NCBI RefSeq assembly: GCF_041956535.1
Contig: NW_027192192.1
Location: 1,459,125 to 1,523,124 of the forward strand
Source of the DNA: Calcarisporiella thermophila CBS 279.70
Taxonomy: Eukaryota; Fungi; Calcarisporiellomycota
Direction of reading: 5' to 3'
Length of the DNA stretch: 64,000 nt
Below the pieces are notes generated by a model. The model was not told the origin of the DNA and did no database searches. It worked only from the letters and a program-made list of their open reading frames with translations. Position 1 is the first letter of the stretch. Each line of letters opens with the position of its first letter. A program made the translations under genes and the position numbers. Below are positions 1 to 8,705 of the stretch, piece after piece.

Positions 1-3000
1 AATATTTCCGGTTTCAGACAGGCAATTACACAGATAGTGACCCATCACGACATGCTCAGGACACGCTTCACCAATCAAGGCATTAACTCGTGGAAACAGA
101 CTGTGATGGACGTGGGCGTGGGTGAAGTAAATGTCCATCATATTGAGTGCAAGGATAGGAAAGAGGTTCAGGAACATGTCAAGCACATGGCATCAACATT
201 GGATATTGCCAAGGGCCCTATGCACTGCGCTGCGCTCATCGAGGTATATAACCTTTTTATTTAGTATGAATACGAGGTAGAGTATTTGTACTTACATTGT
301 TTTTGATCCCGACGATTCGACAGCTCGGCACAGAACAGAGGGTTTACTTCACTATTCACCATCTTGTGGTGGACCTAGTCTCCTGGCGTATCATTCTAGA
401 AGATCTTGAAAGCTTGCTCCAAGGTTACCACCTTGGGGAAAAGACCACATCGTTCCAGGAGTGGGCGGTCGCACAAGTTCAGCAGGCCATACATTTCGAT
501 CCCATAAAATGGGCGCAAAATATTTCTCCATCTGACACGACGGAACTTTTCGAGAATGACTGCATAGAGTAATATCTCTCTCTCCTAGGTTATCGAAAAT
601 CTGCACTCCCATTCTAATCAAGCTGGTTCTATATTAGGGCCATCTGTAGCGGCAACCAGGTCCTCGTTAACAGACTCAGCTCCTCTGCTTCGATTTTGTT
701 TGACGCAGCAAATGAAGCCTACCGGACAAACAATCAGGACTTGGTTTTGGCTGCACTACTGTTAAGTTTTCATGCCATAACAGAGAAGACGACATTGTCG
801 CTCAATTTGGAAGGTCATGGTCGCGAGCCGTGGGATGATTGTTTGGACATCTCAAGGACAGTTGGCTGGTTCACCACAATATACCCCGTCAATCTCTCAA
901 TGACATCTTCGGATTCTATTGGAAGTGTCATTATGGGCGTTAAGAACAACCTTCGCACAGTTCCGAACAAAGGGCTGTCATATGGAGTAATCAAATACCT
1001 TGCGCCTACTACAGATACAACAGACAAGATCAAGAAACATAAGTTGGCTCCGATTAATTTCAACTACTTGGGGCGGTTCCATAACTTCGAGAAAGCCGAA
1101 GCATTCTTTGCTCCCGATGAGAGCATAAAAGCCTGCTATCATGACGAGAATGAAGCATTCCGTGAAATTAATATCAGCTGTTCATTCGGTGCTGATAGGT
1201 GTCTGGAACTGACCATATACTTCAACTCTTCTCTCTTCAAAGCCAGCACTTTAGAGGCATGGGGTAAGAGGTGGACTGAGACAATGGAAGCTCTCATCAA
1301 GCATTGCTGCAACCCCGCCACCCCTGGTGGTATCTCGTCTTTTGATTTCACATTGCTGGAAGATCCCACTTTGATATCCGAGATCGAAGAAGAGCATTTA
1401 CCGGTAATGGGTGTAAAGCCTCGCGATGTGGAAGATATTTATCCTGCTACTCCACTGCAAGCAAGCTTCATTTCTGCTCTTGCGCAAAATCCTCAAGCAT
1501 ATGTAGTGCAATCAGTATACGAGATCAATGGACCACTCGATGCGAATAGGCTTGAGTTGGCATGGTATAAAGTCGCAGTTGCCAATCCAATTCTTCGTAC
1601 GGCATTTGTCTCCACACAACGAGGCGTGTACCAAGTCGTGCTTAGGCTTCCCCCTAATGTATTTGAAGAAACGCTTGAGTGGTCTGAAGATTTGGTTAGC
1701 CAATTCCAAGGACATCTACTGGTTGTTGATCGCTGTCGAGGTTTCCGCCTAGATTGTGTCGCATTTGCTAGATTCACACTTATTCATATCAAAAATACTA
1801 CTCGATACCGGCTGTTCTGGACCATGCATCATTCAATCATCGACGGATGGTGTATATCTCTCATATTCAGCGATATAATGGAAGCATACGCTGGTATCAA
1901 ACTGAAAATCCGACCTCCTTTCAAAACTCATGTTGAATCGATCCTTTCAACTAATATCAATGAAGCAATGATGTTTTGGAAGTCGGTATTTGAAGGAGCA
2001 ATCGTTCCCGATAAGTTAGATATATCAAAAGGAGGCTCTAAACATAAATTTGAGCGTCCGATCTTACAAACTTACAAATTTGATATAACAATGGATTGCC
2101 TTCATCGCTACTGTAACGGGCTCGGCATAACCATTTCGAACTTCCTCCGAGCAATATGGGCCATTGTATTGCGGCATTATACTCGATGTGATGATGTCAT
2201 TTTTGGGTGCGTGATCTTGGGTCGTGACGAAGGAGTTGATAACGTCACAAGGTATGGACTACTCTCCACTTCATTCCACTTGATATCCAATGCTCCATTA
2301 TTAGATTCCATTAATAACTTGTTAATACATAAAGCATGATCGGTGCGCTCATCAATACAATACCGATTCGGGCTATACTGAAGGATTCAATGACGATCCA
2401 CGATCTACTGCAAGCCATGCAAGAGTACCATATTGCCTCTCTCCCGTACAGCCACGTTTCACTAAGCAACATAAAGCGCTGGACAGGGCTGCCATGGATG
2501 CAAGAGATGTTTCCCACCATTTTATCCTATCAGAATACTTACTCGCAACAGAATGCCATAGGAAATGAGTTGAATGGCTTTCAGACAACTGAGGTTGAAC
2601 ACTATGAGGGTACTGAATACCCGCTTACCATTACGATACAAGCATTCAACTCCACTCTCGCTTTGGACGCTCTAGTCAATATGTCAATGATTGATACCAG
2701 AGATGTTGATAGAATAATTTCTAAACTAGAGGATGTGCTGCTAACTGTTTTGAACAGCACCTCCAAATATCCTCCAACGTTGCTTGAACTGGATGTTCTA
2801 TCACCTACTGATATAACAGACTTGGCCTGTATTAGCCAAGGAAAAAAGGCTCAGCTTTCTTATCAATGTCTCCACCATGGGTTTGAATTCAACGCCACGA
2901 AACAACCAGATGCGGTTGCGGTCGAAGGTTATTTCGGAAAAACAATTACATATTACGAGCTGGATTTGCGAGCCAATGCTATTGCCCACTCGCTGCGCAT

Positions 3001-5304
3001 ACAAGGTGTGGCTCAAGGTTGTAAAGTAGGACTCATAATCAAACGGTCGATTGAGATGGTTGTGGGAATTCTTGCGATCCTCAAAGCTGGAGGTGCGTAT
3101 GTGCCAATCGATGCAACATTACCAAGAGATCGAATGGAATATATGCTGAAGGATGCTGCCTGCTCGGTTGTACTGGCTATGCAGGCTACTATCTGCATCC
3201 TTCCCCAGCCAGTGAGCCAAAGAGTTATCCTGATTGATGACTTCATGCATATGGTTCCTGAACATATCACAAAGCCTCTCGATTTATCATCCAGTGACGA
3301 TACTGCTTATATCGTGTATACTTCTGGCACCACGGGCCAACCAAAGGGGGTACCAATTCACCATGGAGGGGCCATGAATTGCATACAAGATCTTCTAACT
3401 ATAAACGGTTCAGGTCCTGGAATACTGCAGTCGCAATTCATGTCGGTAGGATTCGATGGTGCGGTTGCTGATATATTTACTTGCTTAACTCATGGGGGAA
3501 CGCTGGTACTTCGCTCTGAGGATGATGTGGTTGAGTCTTTGAAAAGAGTGGAAGCATTAACTATCACGCCTACTGGGTTACAACACATCCAGCCAGAAGA
3601 TGTCCCCAATCTTCATGTAATTACCGTGTGCGGTGAACCGGTGCCGCAATCATTAGTCGATAAGTGGTCACAACACGTCAAGCTCCTCAATGCATATGGC
3701 CCAACTGAAACTAGCATAATATCAAGCGTCCAGGAGCTTAGAAGAGGGAAAAGAATAGGCATCGGTCGGCCCATCAATAACATGTCATATTATGTTCTAG
3801 ATCAAAAGCTAAGAATGGCTCCTTTGGGAGTTACAGGAGAGCTCTACATTGCAGGTCCCGGCATCGCTAAAGAATATCTCAATCGGCCCGAACTCACCAC
3901 AGAGCGCTTCATTGAGAACCCTTTCATTCCCGGAACCACAATGTACAAGACTGGCGATATAGTCCGCTGGAACCTAGATGGCAACCTAGAGATCCTTGTA
4001 CGTTCCGATGACCAGGTGAAGCTAAAGGGATACCGAGTGGAACTAGGCGAAGTAGCTGCAGCCATGAATACATATCCAGGAGTAGAGGTAGCCGTGGCAC
4101 TTGTGAACGAGAGTATGCTGATCGGCTTTGTCACACCCGTGGGTGTAGACGTTGACAGGCTGCGAGATTCGCTCTTTGATACTCTTCCAGATTACATGGT
4201 CCCGGCAACCATTGTTGCACTTGAAGCATTCCCCATGACAACTAATGGAAAGGTAGACAAGGACAAGCTGAGAGAGATTCCGGCGCAATCAGCCGTGGAC
4301 CGTCAGCTTCCGGCAACAGATAAGCAGCAGCTCGTTGTCGATCTGATGGCGACAGTGCTCAATGTCGATAGAAACATGATTGACCTTCAAACATCCTTCT
4401 TTGCACTTGGTGGTGACTCAATCTCGGCTACTGCTCTGATATCCGCTTTCCACAAGCACGGGCTAGATATTTCCCTTAAACAATTATACAAATCTCCCAC
4501 ACCCGCAACTTTACTATTGGACTCCAATATCACAAAGCCGCCTAACGATACCAAATTTTTCAACGAGCATGGTCCCCACATTTCAAGACGTATTCGCATA
4601 CTTTGCCTTCATGGCTCTGATATGAGTGGCAAAATTATGAAGTTCAAAATGGCGCTTCTCGAAAAAGAGCTATATTCGCTAGTTGATTTCATCTACCTCG
4701 ATGCATGCTTTGACTCAGACATGGCCTGTAATATTTGTGACCTTTCCTGTCCATTTATTCCACCTCTGACCAATTTTTACAATTAGATGTTCAAGAACTG
4801 GAAAAGTATTATGACAGTTCGTTTTTCACCTGGTTTCCTCCTTACCAGTCCAACAGAGAACATGTGGAGCAATCCATTTACCACGTGCTTACTTTCCTTT
4901 CAAGTCTAGGCAAGAAGGTAGATGGTCTTCTTGGATATTGCCAAGGGTCGTGCATAATTGAATTACTTGACCGAATGGCTGAGAGTGGTGAGATTGAGCG
5001 GCAATGGGGATTCAGTGTTCACATATCTGGGGTACTTCTGGACCAAATTCTAGATGATAATATCCTGCCTGCCGGATTATCGCCTGCGAATCTCTGTGCG
5101 CCTATTTCAACTCCCTCAGTTCACTGCATGAGCCCGATTGACGGTCTATATGAAGATAATCTAAAGGTTCAGGGGAGATACAATCCCGAGCTGAGACTTA
5201 CTCTGGAGCACAACTTTGGCCACAATATACCCCAAGCTGCTGAAGCAGTGAGTACATTAGGACGCTTTATTTTAGACACTGCAGAAATATGTCAAAAATC
5301 CTAA
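1..5304 (+). CDS. Non-ribosomal peptide synthetase, 3' part (5'-truncated): epimerization - condensation (DCL-like) - adenylation - PCP - FSH1/LovG-type hydrolase
   Basis: E motifs HHLVVDLVSW, EGHGRE, SRTVGWFTT, FNYLGRF; C motifs DIYPATPLQ, HHSIIDGW; A motifs YTSGTTGQPKGV, NAYGPTE, GELYIAGPG, YKTGD, NGKVDK; PCP LGGDSI; terminal RILCLHG...GYCQG...GHNIP. GT-AG introns (~244-321, 569-637, ~2252-2334, ~4728-4786) join the ORF-track pieces. Confidence 0.95.
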
Positions 5305-6156
5305 TTATCGGTTGCTAGATTTGCTTTATTGAATTGTTTTTTTCCATACTCAAAATCTTACCTACTGTATATCCTGTAATCTTGTTCAAAGTCTGGAGCT
5401 AAATACATTTAATATAATGATTTATTTGTCAAATGATATATTTTGAACTGTCTTTTGACCTGATTTATTATCAGCAATCTGTGGACTTCAAAGCTTGACA
5501 GTAGCCAATTCTATATGCTTCATGGTTAAAGAGTTAATAAAGATGAAAAAGCAGAAAAATATCACTATAAAATATAAAGCAATAGTGTGGTTCTTATAAG
5601 AAACCTTTCCTAAAACTTGAGTCAGATGATATAGAGAACTATACTAGTGCAATTATCTGCTCTCCAGAGGGTATTTTGTTACCATTTAGACATCATTAAT
5701 TACAACAACTTTCCGTCAACACTAACAAGTTCCTACCTCCACTCGTCTCCCAACTGTCCGTCCTCGTTACGCTACGGATGGGTGACGTAGAAGGACGCGG
5801 CATGCGCCGTCAAATACATAGCTAATATATCTTTTTTTTATTTTTCACGCCGCTGACATTTGACCTTGAAGAGGGCCGCAATGATTCCTTTTTTGAAACT
5901 CCCCTGCCAATGATGTTCATTTACCCGAGAATTAGTAATGGCTGGCGCCAATCTGTTTCTCTGCTTTACTCTGTGGAACGGAAATATACATTTCGCGTAA
6001 TAGTAAGGTCATTGCTTGCTATTATCAGGTATGCCAAAACGCAAGCATCGCTGGCCAAGAAATATATCTGCGAAAAGATATATTCAGCGACACTTTTGGC
6101 ACCTCGACCTAATTAATTCTCTTCATTCTAATCTCTCTTTCTTCTCGCGTGTTTGA

Positions 6157-7980
6157 ATGGCATCGAAAACATTCTTCCCCAAATGGGGTGCCCCCTCGCT
6201 CCTCTACCTCTACCCTCCCGTCTTCATTAGCATGCTCATGCTAGGGGCTATAGAAGGCCCCCTCCCGCTTCTCGTCCGAAATCTTGTGTGCCAGGAATAT
6301 TATACCTCGACCCAGCCCAATGCCTTGGCGAATATAAGCCTATTTAATGAGGACTCTGAGTTGTGCTCTGCGCCGATAGTGCAGCAGAGGACATCAAGAC
6401 TAATGATGATAAACGCATTAACCATTAGCATTTCGAGTAAGTATAGCCCTCACCACGGAGTCTTCCAGTCGCCACTGATATAATTCTCTCTTCTTTATCA
6501 GCCATACTTGTGCTGACCTATCTTGGATCTCTCTCCGACCGCAAAGGTCGCCGACTTTTCATGGCCATATCCAACTTTGGTGTACTCTTGTTCAATACCG
6601 TGATTCTGCTTGTTTATCTGTGGTGGAATGTTCTGGGCTCAGGTTTTTTAACCGTCGGCTTTCTCCTTGTGGGCCTCTCGGGAGGTGCGTCCGGCTTCCT
6701 TGTAAGCATGCAGGCTTATATTGTTGACATCACCGCGCCGAAACACAGGTAATGTCGAAGGGTGAAGCTATCAGGCGACATGGTTTCACGAGTAACGATT
6801 TTGTACCGTACCTTTATTAGAGGCGTGACCTTTGGATACCTCTTTGCACTCATTTACACCGGGCTCGGCTTAGGCCCTATGCTTGGAAACCTCACCGTCA
6901 AACTTACGAATTCATTCGGCACCATCCTATACACAAGCGTTGTTTTTCGCATTTTGTTTCTCGTTTATATCGTGTTTGTGCTCCCGGAATCCAACCCAGG
7001 GGGAGAGTATGCTCCACTCACACGGTCCGCAGGAGCCGAGTTCACTGCTTTAAATGACACCCCCAGCTCTCCAGTTACCCAAACACATTCAACTGAAGCT
7101 TCCAATACTAGTATGCGTGACCGATTGGTCCTCACCGCCAAAAAACTGCACCGTGTAATCATACCCCCTCTTTTTGCTCAAGAGAACAGCCGCCGTAAAT
7201 GGGCCCTTATACTACTCGTGGCAGTCAATTTCTTCAATAACACGGCCGTCGTGTCAATGGTTGGGGTTCAGAATCTCTACTATGCTTCCCAGTTCCATTG
7301 GGGACCGGCTGAGAGCGGAGAATTTTTCTCTCTTCAGTGTTTCTCGCGACTGCTAGTATCCTCCGCCCTCTTTCCGCTGCTGACCTATGTGTTCAAGGGG
7401 AACCGAGCGAAGTCTCCGTTTTCTTTACCCGAGGGAACCGAAGCCGATCCGCTTCTATCTCGAGACGCGGCAGAGGCCGAGATTGACTTGAGCCACGAGG
7501 TGAATGATTCAAAAATCGCTTATACTCTGAAAGACGCGCGATTTGACACGTGGATCATTCGTATCACCCTTGTTGGGTTGGTGTTTGTGTGGGCATCCTA
7601 TGGAGTTGCCACAAAGAGCTGGATGATATATTGTCGTAAGTTGAATGATGCTGTATAAACGGAGTTGGATAGCTCCATAACTGACCGCTATCTCCATTGT
7701 AGTGGCCATCATTACAGCAACCGATGCCCTAATCGAGCCCGCCCTTCGCTCGCTTTTCGCCAATCTTCAATCAGGGCACACCGGAGAAAACCTCTCTGCC
7801 CTCGGTCTCTCAGAAGCCCTCGCCACCACCATCTCCCCCCTTGTCCTCTACAACTCGTACTCCAAATTGGTAGAAGTAGGGCAGCCGCACCTTATCTTCT
7901 TCATGGCATCGGGGATCATGTTTGTCGCCTGTGTTTTGGCGTTTTTGTTTCCAGCTCGAGTAGCAAAAGAAGAAATCTGA
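6157..7980 (+). CDS. MFS transporter (SLC46/TetA-like), 4 exons
   Basis: MFS motif A GSLSDRKGRR, QAYIVD, GLGLGPMLG, many hydrophobic helices across spliced ORFs. Confidence 0.9.
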
Positions 7981-8705
7981 AGAACTAGAGGCGGCGGCGC
8001 TGTATTATTATGCAATTTGTGTGTATTAGTATATCAATGGCCCATAATTTATATATGCTTAATTGTTAGAAACCCCCTTGCATTTGAGCAATTTAACTTT
8101 CGATTCTACCCATAATAAAATGACGAAGAGCAATTCCATCCACGCCACCTACGCGGATGGCCGCTCCTAGTTTGACTCCATATCAATGAAGATAATACTT
8201 GCAAAATCCTTTCTCTCCCAGAGGACAAGCTCAGTTCACATGGTCAAGGGTGGGCTTTAGTTTAATTTTTTGTATTATTGAGTGTGTATCCTTCTCTTGA
8301 TCCCCCGTAATCGTGTTGGAAACCGACTTCACTCCATTAACTAAAATATTAGCTACTCATCTCGGTGGAGTTATACCTCTCTACTACCGCCGGATTCATG
8401 CACGTTTTTACAACCCCATGGTGCCTGCTGTCTTATTCATGAGACAGGGTTCAATGGATAAAAAACATTCTCCAAAATTCTCTGAAATCATTTCATTGTC
8501 CATACCACGTTTACAAATATTGGGGGGAAGTAAAGAGTGGACAAGTACGAACTGGGAGATAACTTGTTAAACGAACTCTCAATCATAGACATAAAAAGCG
8601 GGAGTTATCACGATAGACATAAATTGTAGTACTTTCATAGGGATCTAAACAACACGACGTTGTGGAATTGAACATACTACTTGCCATCCTCGGGCCGCTA
8701 GGATA

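What the first reader, a model, noticed from the sequence alone, without database searches (positions are those of the whole stretch)
4590..5304. NRPS released by an FSH1/LovG-type hydrolase with a cysteine nucleophile (GYCQG)
Seen: after the last PCP (LGGDSI) the NRPS has no canonical TE, R or CT domain. It carries RILCLHG...FIYLDA...DGLLGYCQG...HCMSPID...EHNFGHNIP instead. Known: this pattern is the FSH1/OVCA2/LovG family (LCLHG, GxxGFSQG, HxxGxxD, HxxGHxxP), normally stand-alone Ser hydrolases such as the trans-acting LovG in lovastatin release. Here the nucleophile codon is TGC (4939-4941), with Asp and His retained. Inference: a fused Cys-His-Asp release domain that would form a thioester intermediate and may favour cyclisation or transacylation over hydrolysis. 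This would be an unusual NRPS termination mechanism in an early-diverging fungus.
Basis: partly seen in the sequence, partly recalled or inferred. Interest (0 to 1): 0.8.

Follow-up and report, generated by a model that had tools for sequence, protein, structure and literature searches.

The report
NRPS release hydrolase with cysteine nucleophile
A peptide-making megaenzyme of the thermophilic fungus Calcarisporiella thermophila ends in an FSH1-type hydrolase domain, not the usual release domain, and its catalytic serine is replaced by cysteine, a swap that recurs among sister genes in the same genome.

Summary
The window lies in Calcarisporiella thermophila. Its NRPS gene (deposited model KAL1925070.1, "uncharacterized") ends C-A-PCP and then a Pfam FSH1 (PF03959) alpha/beta-hydrolase domain, split by a 59-nt GT..AG intron at 4728-4786. 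No Thioesterase family matches, even at E<=1. The nucleophile codon is TGC at 4939-4941 (GYCQG).

An AlphaFold model (pLDDT 90.5) puts the Cys on a strand-nucleophile-helix elbow. Asp and His follow the next-but-one and the next strands. Yeast Fsh1 (1YCD) is the best structural match, followed by acyl-protein thioesterases.

Two corrections apply.
- The NRPS-FSH1 fusion is not new. It was noted in Batrachochytrium in 2010, and I find it at the C-terminus of about 25 chytrid NRPSs that form one well-supported clade.
- The Cys is not unique to this gene. Six such NRPS ends exist in this genome: three Cys (all TGC) and three Ser (AGT/AGC). The Cys copies are not monophyletic (AU p=0.006), so Ser and Cys have been exchanged repeatedly.

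All chytrid representatives of the clade that keep the residue have Ser, and two have lost it (Ala, Gly).

Most likely this is a functional Cys-His-Asp chain-release domain acting through an acyl-S-enzyme. Whether it cyclises or hydrolyses is untested. The scan also flagged the two Cys paralogs elsewhere in this genome. Reads could not be checked.

The parts
1428..2767 (+). Condensation domain of the last module. It is interrupted by a short intron near 2250-2323 in the deposited model.
   Evidence: Pfam PF00668: profile 1-283 in window:696-2336 and profile 289-439 in window:2336-4726. Exon mapping of P0001 onto the window.
2882..4252 (+). Adenylation domain of the last module (AMP-binding plus AMP-binding_C).
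   Evidence: PF00501 at 251 bits, residues 183-515 of window:2336-4726. PF13193 at residues 572-639.
4331..4513 (+). Last peptidyl carrier domain. The phosphopantetheine-attachment Ser of LGGDSI is encoded at 4418-4420.
   Evidence: PF00550 at 53.2 bits, residues 666-726. Sequence read.
4586..4727 (+). FSH1 domain, first exon. It holds strand IRILCL followed by the HG oxyanion-loop dipeptide, and FIYLDA.
   Evidence: PF03959 profile 3-47, 28.5 bits. Translation. The model shows strand 29-34 followed by H35-G36.
4728..4786 (+). Phase-1 GT..AG intron of 59 nt inside the FSH1 domain. Four of the six paralogs share this position.
   Evidence: Sequence. The junction is identical to that of deposited protein P0001. 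The same T|GTA donor position occurs in the C25, C6 and C3 copies, and there is no intron in the C37 copy.
4787..5304 (+). FSH1 domain, second exon, with all three triad residues and the stop codon.
   Evidence: PF03959 profile 66-209, 41.3 bits. Translation.
4939..4941 (+). TGC codon for the nucleophile Cys (GYCQG), residue 2636 of P0001.
   Evidence: It is in the same column as Ser in three paralogs and as the GLSQG Ser of yeast Fsh1 1YCD, via the C37 paralog. It lies between strand 120-124 and helix 126-139 of the model.
5140..5142 (+). GAC codon for the triad Asp (SPID), invariant in the six paralogs.
   Evidence: Invariant D118 in alignment A1. It lies four residues after strand 184-188 of the model.
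5221..5223 (+). CAC codon for the triad His (GHNIP).
   Evidence: Invariant H145 in A1 and at least 90% conserved in the 62-sequence alignment A2. It lies five residues after strand 210-214 of the model.

Best explanation
The last module of a multimodular Calcarisporiella thermophila NRPS (C-A-PCP) is fused to an FSH1-family alpha/beta-hydrolase domain that serves as the chain-release domain. This domain belongs to a clade of PCP-linked FSH1 domains that terminate NRPSs of Chytridiomycota and of this fungus.

In this copy the nucleophile is Cys in a Cys-His-Asp triad. The inferred mechanism has two steps. First, the peptidyl thioester on the last PCP is passed by transthioesterification to the Cys, giving an acyl-S-enzyme. 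Second, the His-activated acceptor resolves that intermediate. The acceptor may be water, an internal amine or hydroxyl of the peptide, or an external nucleophile.

Cys is a working alternative nucleophile, not a defect. Ser and Cys have been exchanged several times among the six paralogous NRPS ends of this genome, while the rest of the active site stayed fixed.

Shown here: domain identity, architecture, residue positions, fold, and the distribution of Ser and Cys. Inferred: the release function, the thioester intermediate and the acceptor.
For: - Domain identity: Pfam FSH1 is above cut-off in both exons and in the deposited protein, and no Thioesterase hit appears.
- Organism and gene model: P0001 = KAL1925070.1 on the 1,570,740-base contig that holds the window.
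- Fold: the AF2 model has pLDDT 90.5. The best PDB match is yeast Fsh1 1YCD (E 3e-12), followed by carboxylesterases and the acyl-protein thioesterases APT1/2. No NRPS TE appears in the top 50.
- Triad topology: Cys125 sits on the strand-to-helix elbow, Asp192 follows the next-but-one strand, His219 follows the last strand, and HG follows the first strand.
- Release role: all 15 long relatives whose domains were scanned, and most fragments, have A-PCP-FSH1 at the extreme C-terminus with no other release domain. These PCP-linked domains form a clade with 99% SH-aLRT support, apart from stand-alone FSH1 proteins.
- Cys is real and functional: three of six paralogs carry TGC and three carry AGT/AGC. 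No other residue occurs there in this genome, and Asp, His and the GS/ELLDR surroundings are invariant. Monophyly of the Cys copies is rejected (AU p=0.006).
- Precedent: Cys nucleophiles in the NRPS release domains SulM and ObiF1.
Against: - No biochemical or expression data exist. No sequencing run was listed, so neither the codon nor transcription could be checked against reads.
Only secondary-structure topology and alignment support the geometry.
- All chytrid members have Ser, so Ser suffices for the basic job, and the Cys may bring no change in chemistry.
- The release role rests on position and on the absence of alternatives. A trans-acting releasing enzyme elsewhere cannot be excluded.
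- The deposited gene model is imperfect. It starts inside a C domain and skips a PCP. Parts of the upstream gene are withheld.
Confidence: 0.7

Rival explanations
1. The domain releases the peptide by plain hydrolysis, exactly as its Ser paralogs do. The Ser-to-Cys change is functionally near-neutral drift between two competent nucleophiles that are one transversion apart.
For: AGC and TGC differ by one base. No other active-site column co-varies with Cys versus Ser in the six paralogs. Ser is the state in all chytrid relatives.
Against: Cys is rare in the family: 4 of 140 rows. Yet it is present in half of the copies in this one genome, with at least three changes on a six-tip tree. That is hard to reconcile with pure neutrality. 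In SulM and ObiF1, Cys is tied to special release chemistry.
Confidence: 0.3
2. The FSH1 domain is not the release catalyst. It could be an editing, type II TE-like hydrolase that clears mis-primed carrier domains, or an acyltransferase that loads or passes on an acyl group. Release would then be done in trans.
For: The stand-alone FSH1 relative LovG acts in trans and aids turnover of its synthase (Xu et al. 2013, cited in PMC10512364). The nearest folds are acyl-protein thioesterases. One metagenomic relative is C-FSH1 without an intervening PCP.
Against: The domain is always the very last one, directly after the last PCP. Every scanned NRPS of the clade lacks a TE, R or terminal C domain. 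The only neighbouring gene examined is a weak MFS_1 match (22.3 bits, below the 33.4-bit cut-off), not a hydrolase.
Confidence: 0.1
3. The Cys codon is a sequencing or assembly error, or the gene is decaying.
Against: The same TGC occurs in three diverged paralogs (45-57% identity) on different contigs. The reading frame, the splice sites and all other catalytic residues are intact.
Confidence: 0.03

Closest known systems
C-terminal FSH1 domains of chytrid NRPSs (for example B. dendrobatidis BDEG_03514.1, T-C-T-A-T-FSH1; Bushley and Turgeon 2010, PMC2823734)
   Same: Same Pfam family, the same position directly after the last PCP, and the same clade in the domain tree.
   Different: All chytrid representatives that keep the residue have Ser at the nucleophile. 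This copy and two paralogs have Cys. None of these domains has been studied biochemically in the papers I found.
Yeast Fsh1 (PDB 1YCD), human OVCA2 and stand-alone fungal FSH1 hydrolases such as LovG
   Same: Same Pfam family and fold. 1YCD is the best structural match, and the GxSxG column aligns. LovG releases a carrier-bound product (Xu et al. 2013).
   Different: Those are free-standing Ser enzymes. This one is fused in cis and has Cys. In the tree it falls in a clade separate from the stand-alone proteins. Kinship to LovG itself was not tested.
Cys-nucleophile type I thioesterase domains of the bacterial NRPSs SulM (sulfazecin) and ObiF1 (obafluorin)
   Same: A terminal alpha/beta-hydrolase release domain with a Cys-His-Asp triad. 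The acid lies on the loop after strand beta7, as in the general superfamily.
   Different: Those belong to the Thioesterase family with a lid. This domain gives no Thioesterase hit and no NRPS TE among its 50 best structural matches. This is convergence, not membership.
FSH1 domains in dinoflagellate hybrid PKS/NRPS transcripts (PMC8283056)
   Same: An FSH1 hydrolase fused to a megasynthase in a eukaryote.
   Different: A different lineage and a PKS context. The nucleophile and the phylogenetic relation were not examined here.

Membership tests
Pfam FSH1 (PF03959) serine hydrolase family | Score above the curated gathering cut-off over most of the profile | tested here: met
   Exons score 28.5 and 41.3 bits. 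The deposited protein scores 67.8 bits over profile 3-209 of 211. The cut-off is 21 bits.
Pfam FSH1 (PF03959) serine hydrolase family | Alpha/beta-hydrolase fold closest to Fsh1 | tested here: met
   Model pLDDT 90.5. The best PDB match is 1YCD, E 2.9e-12, TM 0.63-0.65.
Pfam FSH1 (PF03959) serine hydrolase family | Ser nucleophile in GxSxG | tested here: not met
   The motif is GYCQG, codon TGC at 4939-4941. The column holds S 134, C 4, A 1, G 1 among 140 rows.
Pfam FSH1 (PF03959) serine hydrolase family | Acid and His of the triad, and the HG oxyanion loop | tested here: met
   D118 and H145 are invariant in the paralogs. Their topological positions are canonical, and HG follows the first strand. 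Distances were not measurable.
NRPS type I thioesterase (PF00975) | Match to the Thioesterase profile or fold | tested here: not met
   No hit at E<=1 in any of the six paralog domains. No NRPS TE appears among the 50 best Foldseek matches.
PCP-linked FSH1 release-domain clade of early-diverging fungi | Placed directly after the last PCP at the protein C-terminus | tested here: met
   The PCP spans 4331-4513, FSH1 starts at 4586, and the stop is at 5302-5304. Relatives show the same architecture.
PCP-linked FSH1 release-domain clade of early-diverging fungi | Groups with those domains in a tree, apart from stand-alone FSH1 proteins | tested here: met
   A clade of 39 rows has SH-aLRT 99 in a quick tree. 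The six Calcarisporiella copies lie inside it.
PCP-linked FSH1 release-domain clade of early-diverging fungi | Catalyses offloading of the PCP-bound peptide | not testable with these tools
   This needs enzyme assays. No paper I found reports any.

The most novel reading that the evidence does not exclude
FSH1-type domains are a third, uncharacterised class of fungal NRPS offloading domain, besides TE and the terminal C domain. In Calcarisporiella thermophila, natural Ser/Cys pairs among paralogs tune the release chemistry. The Cys forms would hold the peptide as a thioester and release it non-hydrolytically, by macrolactam or lactone formation or by transfer to an external nucleophile. This would parallel, by convergence, the Cys thioesterases SulM and ObiF1.
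Probability: 0.3. Interest if true: 0.8.

Novelty: new variant of a known kind. Interest (0 to 1): 0.6.

Why it matters
Chain release decides whether an NRPS product is linear, cyclic or strained. Fungal NRPSs are thought to release mainly through terminal condensation-like, reductase or TE domains. The FSH1-type terminus of chytrid and Calcarisporiella NRPSs has been noted only in passing and never assayed.

This genome holds three Cys and three Ser versions of the same domain, on otherwise conserved active sites and in a thermophile. That is a ready-made natural experiment on what a Cys nucleophile buys a release domain. It is also a source of compact, lid-less, thermostable offloading domains for engineering. 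The products of all these NRPSs are unknown.

Tried and rejected
- **Reads.** The look-up of sequencing runs listed no run for 3800-5400. The TGC and the splicing could not be checked against reads.
- **PDB by sequence.** A profile of exon 2 against PDB sequences gave nothing at E<=1. Only the intron-less C37 paralog reached 1YCD, at E 5e-4.
- **Word search.** Searching with P0001 residues 2512-2756 returned only P0001 and its paralog P0004. The length window excludes shorter and longer relatives, so this says nothing about absence.
- **Joined exons.** Exons were searched separately by reference. For the full domain I used the deposited protein P0001 by id, whose junction equals the inferred one.
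- **Upstream NRPS.** Large stretches of C2, C37, C25 and C6 are withheld and read as N. The full module count of this gene was therefore not determined and was not pursued.
- **Triad distances.** Model coordinates are not exposed.
- **Co-varying positions.** I looked for active-site columns that co-vary with Cys versus Ser in the six paralogs and found none.
- **A-domain specificity.** Stachelhaus codes were not attempted, because no reference sequence was available by reference.

Full report
**1. The observation**

In frame 2, the open frame 2336-4786 encodes the end of a condensation domain, an adenylation domain and a carrier domain with LGGDSI. The Ser codon is at 4418-4420. After about 25 linker residues comes RILCLHG...FIYLDA.

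That frame runs into a stop at 4784-4786. A second frame (4789-5304) then carries DGLLGYCQG, HCMSPID and EHNFGHNIP, followed by a TAA stop. The deposited protein for this gene, P0001, has exactly the junction DSDMA-Y-VQELE. The Cys codon is TGC at 4939-4941.

For the whole domain I used the deposited protein by its id.

**2. What the domain is**

Pfam scores both exons as FSH1 (PF03959). The first covers profile positions 3-47 at 28.5 bits and the second covers 66-209 at 41.3 bits, against a cut-off of 21. P0001 scores 67.8 bits in one stretch, 3-209 of 211, at residues 2538-2740. Nothing from the Thioesterase family appears at E<=1 in this copy or in its five paralogs.

An AlphaFold2 model of P0001:2512-2756 was built on a 62-sequence alignment (A2). 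It is confident, with mean pLDDT 90.5 and pTM 0.87. Its best match among solved structures is yeast Fsh1 (1YCD, E 2.9e-12). Next come bacterial carboxylesterases and the acyl-protein thioesterases APT1 and APT2. No NRPS thioesterase domain is among the 50 best matches.

By sequence, the intron-less paralog on contig C37 aligns its GFSQG to the GLSQG of 1YCD. In the paralog alignment, the window's Cys sits in that same column.

**3. Is the Cys in a triad?**

Coordinates of the model are not exposed, so I could not measure distances. The topology is canonical, however:
- Strand 29-34 (IRILCL) is followed by H35-G36, the usual oxyanion-loop dipeptide.
- Strand 120-124 is followed by Cys125 and then helix 126-139, the nucleophile elbow.
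- Asp192 lies four residues after strand 184-188.
- His219 lies five residues after strand 210-214.

Asp and His are invariant in the six paralogs. His is at least 90% conserved in the 62-sequence alignment.

**4. Organism and gene**

P0001 is KAL1925070.1 / XP_069256332.1, "uncharacterized protein VTP21DRAFT_4724" of Calcarisporiella thermophila. It lies on a contig of 1,570,740 bases, which is the length of contig C2 that holds the window.

The deposited model (2756 aa) starts inside a condensation domain, and in one place it passes from an adenylation domain straight into a condensation domain. Further C and A domains lie in open frames up to about 11.5 kb upstream of the window. The real gene is therefore probably longer, or a second NRPS gene abuts it.

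Downstream, at 6762-7655, is a weak MFS_1 match of 22.3 bits, below its 33.4-bit cut-off.

**5. The fusion is a family, not a one-off**

A profile of the six paralog domains was searched against 1.84 billion representative proteins. It found only 243 hits at E<=0.001. Twenty-five of the 150 listed are longer than 700 residues (most 1,600-6,600). The Pfam-scanned ones match at or near their C-terminal end.

All 15 scanned long relatives (nine chytrid representatives, three chytrid fragments over 700 residues and three Calcarisporiella paralogs) show A-PCP-FSH1 at or near the C-terminus; P0022 carries a sub-threshold APH match after it (22.9 bits, cut-off 23.2). None shows another release domain. 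Most shorter hits are fragments with the same PCP-FSH1 order.

Besides Calcarisporiella, every named member is from Chytridiomycota: Batrachochytrium dendrobatidis and B. salamandrivorans, Spizellomyces, Globomyces, Chytriomyces, Geranomyces, Phlyctochytrium, Zopfochytrium, Polyrhizophydium, Thoreauomyces, Quaeritorhiza, Terramyces, Dinochytrium and Physocladia.

In a quick maximum-likelihood tree, these PCP-linked domains form one clade with SH-aLRT 99, apart from the stand-alone FSH1 proteins.

The fusion was already reported. Bushley and Turgeon (2010, PMC2823734) described a B. dendrobatidis NRPS with T-C-T-A-T followed by an FSH1-like serine hydrolase domain. FSH1 domains also occur in dinoflagellate PKS/NRPS transcripts (PMC8283056). 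I found no paper that assays any of these domains.

**6. The cysteine**

Within the genome, a six-frame search with PF03959 found six NRPS-linked copies.

| Contig | Nucleophile motif | Codon |
|---|---|---|
| C2 (this window) | GYCQG | TGC |
| C25 | GFCEG | TGC |
| C52 | GFCQG | TGC |
| C37 | GFSQG | AGT |
| C6 | GFSEG | AGT |
| C3 | GFSEG | AGC |

AGC and TGC are one transversion apart. The paralogs are 45-57% identical over the second exon, with the triad and its surroundings invariant.

I built a careful tree with the nucleophile masked. The six copies form one clade. Within it:
- C2 (Cys) pairs with C37 (Ser), support 93/82.
- C25 (Cys) pairs with the C6+C3 pair (Ser), support 95/89.
- C52 (Cys) is basal.

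A tree that forces the three Cys copies together is rejected (log-likelihood 20.6 lower, AU p=0.006). With Ser in the chytrid outgroups, at least three Ser/Cys changes are needed. Either Cys was gained three times, or it was gained once and reverted twice.

Four copies (C2, C25, C6, C3) share the phase-1 intron at the same codon, and C37 lacks it. The family therefore expanded inside this eukaryotic lineage.

In the wider family, the nucleophile column holds Ser in 134 of 140 rows and Cys in 4. The four are P0001, P0003 (the C52 copy), an unnamed 268-aa stand-alone protein from a Logan assembly (P0021), and an Aphanomyces stellatus protein. Ala and Gly occur once each, in two long proteins.

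**7. How it most likely works**

*Shown:* a confident FSH1 fold, a Cys on the nucleophile elbow, the acid and His in place, a position directly after the last PCP, no alternative release domain, and recurrent Ser/Cys exchange with nothing else ever in that column in this genome.

*Inferred:*
- The domain offloads the finished peptide.
- The phosphopantetheinyl thioester is passed to Cys2636 by transthioesterification, giving an acyl-S-enzyme.
- His2730 then activates the acceptor.

The structural neighbours are themselves thioesterases that act on protein-bound acyl thioesters (APT1/2). The stand-alone family member LovG releases a carrier-bound polyketide (Xu et al. 2013, as cited in PMC10512364). 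Both make thioester cleavage a natural activity for this fold.

The acceptor is unknown. It could be water, an internal amine or hydroxyl, or an external nucleophile. In the bacterial NRPSs SulM and ObiF1, a Cys nucleophile accompanies beta-lactam and beta-lactone formation, with the acid on the loop after beta7 (PMC11298585 and PMC6668435). That is an analogy by convergence, since those domains are of the Thioesterase family and this one is not. From general chemistry, which is my own knowledge and was not tested here, a thioester acyl-enzyme is more reactive towards amines than an oxoester. That would favour aminolysis or cyclisation. A thermophile may also face more competing hydrolysis.

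**8. Rivals**

- Near-neutral exchange of two competent nucleophiles, with plain hydrolysis in both. This is possible, because no other column co-varies. It sits oddly with the rarity of Cys elsewhere and its frequency here.
- An editing or acyl-transfer role, with release in trans. The invariant terminal position and the lack of any other release domain argue against it.
- Error or decay. This is very unlikely.

**9. Verdict**

The family assignment is correct at the Pfam level. The claim that such a termination is unusual has to be narrowed. The FSH1 terminus is the standard ending of a whole, uncharacterised clade of NRPSs in early-diverging fungi, and it was already noted in 2010. What is new is the Cys form and its repeated exchange with Ser among paralogs in one genome. 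I rate it a new variant of a known kind and moderately to highly interesting, because it is directly testable.

The scan's first readers also flagged a Cys paralog (GFCEG) and another Cys-ended NRPS elsewhere in this genome. I confirmed Cys copies on contigs C25 and C52.

Noticed in passing
window 1-2336, and upstream G000:C2:1447608-1459124 (L016, L022): The deposited model P0001 begins inside a condensation domain, and at residues ~1095-1300 it goes from a truncated A domain straight into a C domain with no PCP. Further C and A domains lie in open frames upstream. The NRPS is probably longer than annotated, or the model is mis-split.
   Followed up: partly
window 6157-7988 (+): The downstream neighbour shows a weak MFS_1 match (22.3 bits, below the 33.4-bit cut-off) at 6762-7655. 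It is split over several short open frames, so it probably contains introns.
   Followed up: partly
L029:37-2028 (JGI metagenome 3300047128, contig Ga0499905_0847): P0055 is a Condensation-FSH1 protein with no carrier domain between the two (nucleophile motif GWSQG). It is followed by further NRPS pieces, and a second FSH1 sits at the locus end. In the tree it is sister to the Cys-bearing stand-alone P0021.
   Followed up: partly
P0005 (Globomyces sp. JEL0801, KAJ2990346.1): It holds two identical PCP-FSH1 units in tandem in one 834-aa protein on a 5.5-kb contig. Asn is in the column of the triad acid. It could be an assembly duplication or a real tandem.
   Followed up: no
P0054 (3087 aa) and P0132 (5140 aa): These long proteins (domains not scanned) have a partial FSH1 match near the C-terminus whose nucleophile column holds Ala (GFADA) or Gly (GVGEG). 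They may be inactivated release domains.
   Followed up: no
Acid column of the FSH1 alignment (hits): Many chytrid PCP-linked domains show Glu, not Asp, at the triad acid column, and a few show non-acidic residues (V, I, A, S, L). This is either alignment slippage in a variable loop or a relocated acid.
   Followed up: no
P0066 / P0151 (Aphanomyces stellatus): An oomycete stand-alone FSH1 protein also has Cys at the nucleophile (GFCLG). This is an independent occurrence outside fungi.
   Followed up: no
L004 (G000:C37:11002-11646, minus strand): The C37 paralog has lost the intron that splits the FSH1 domain in the C2, C25, C6 and C3 copies.
   Followed up: yes
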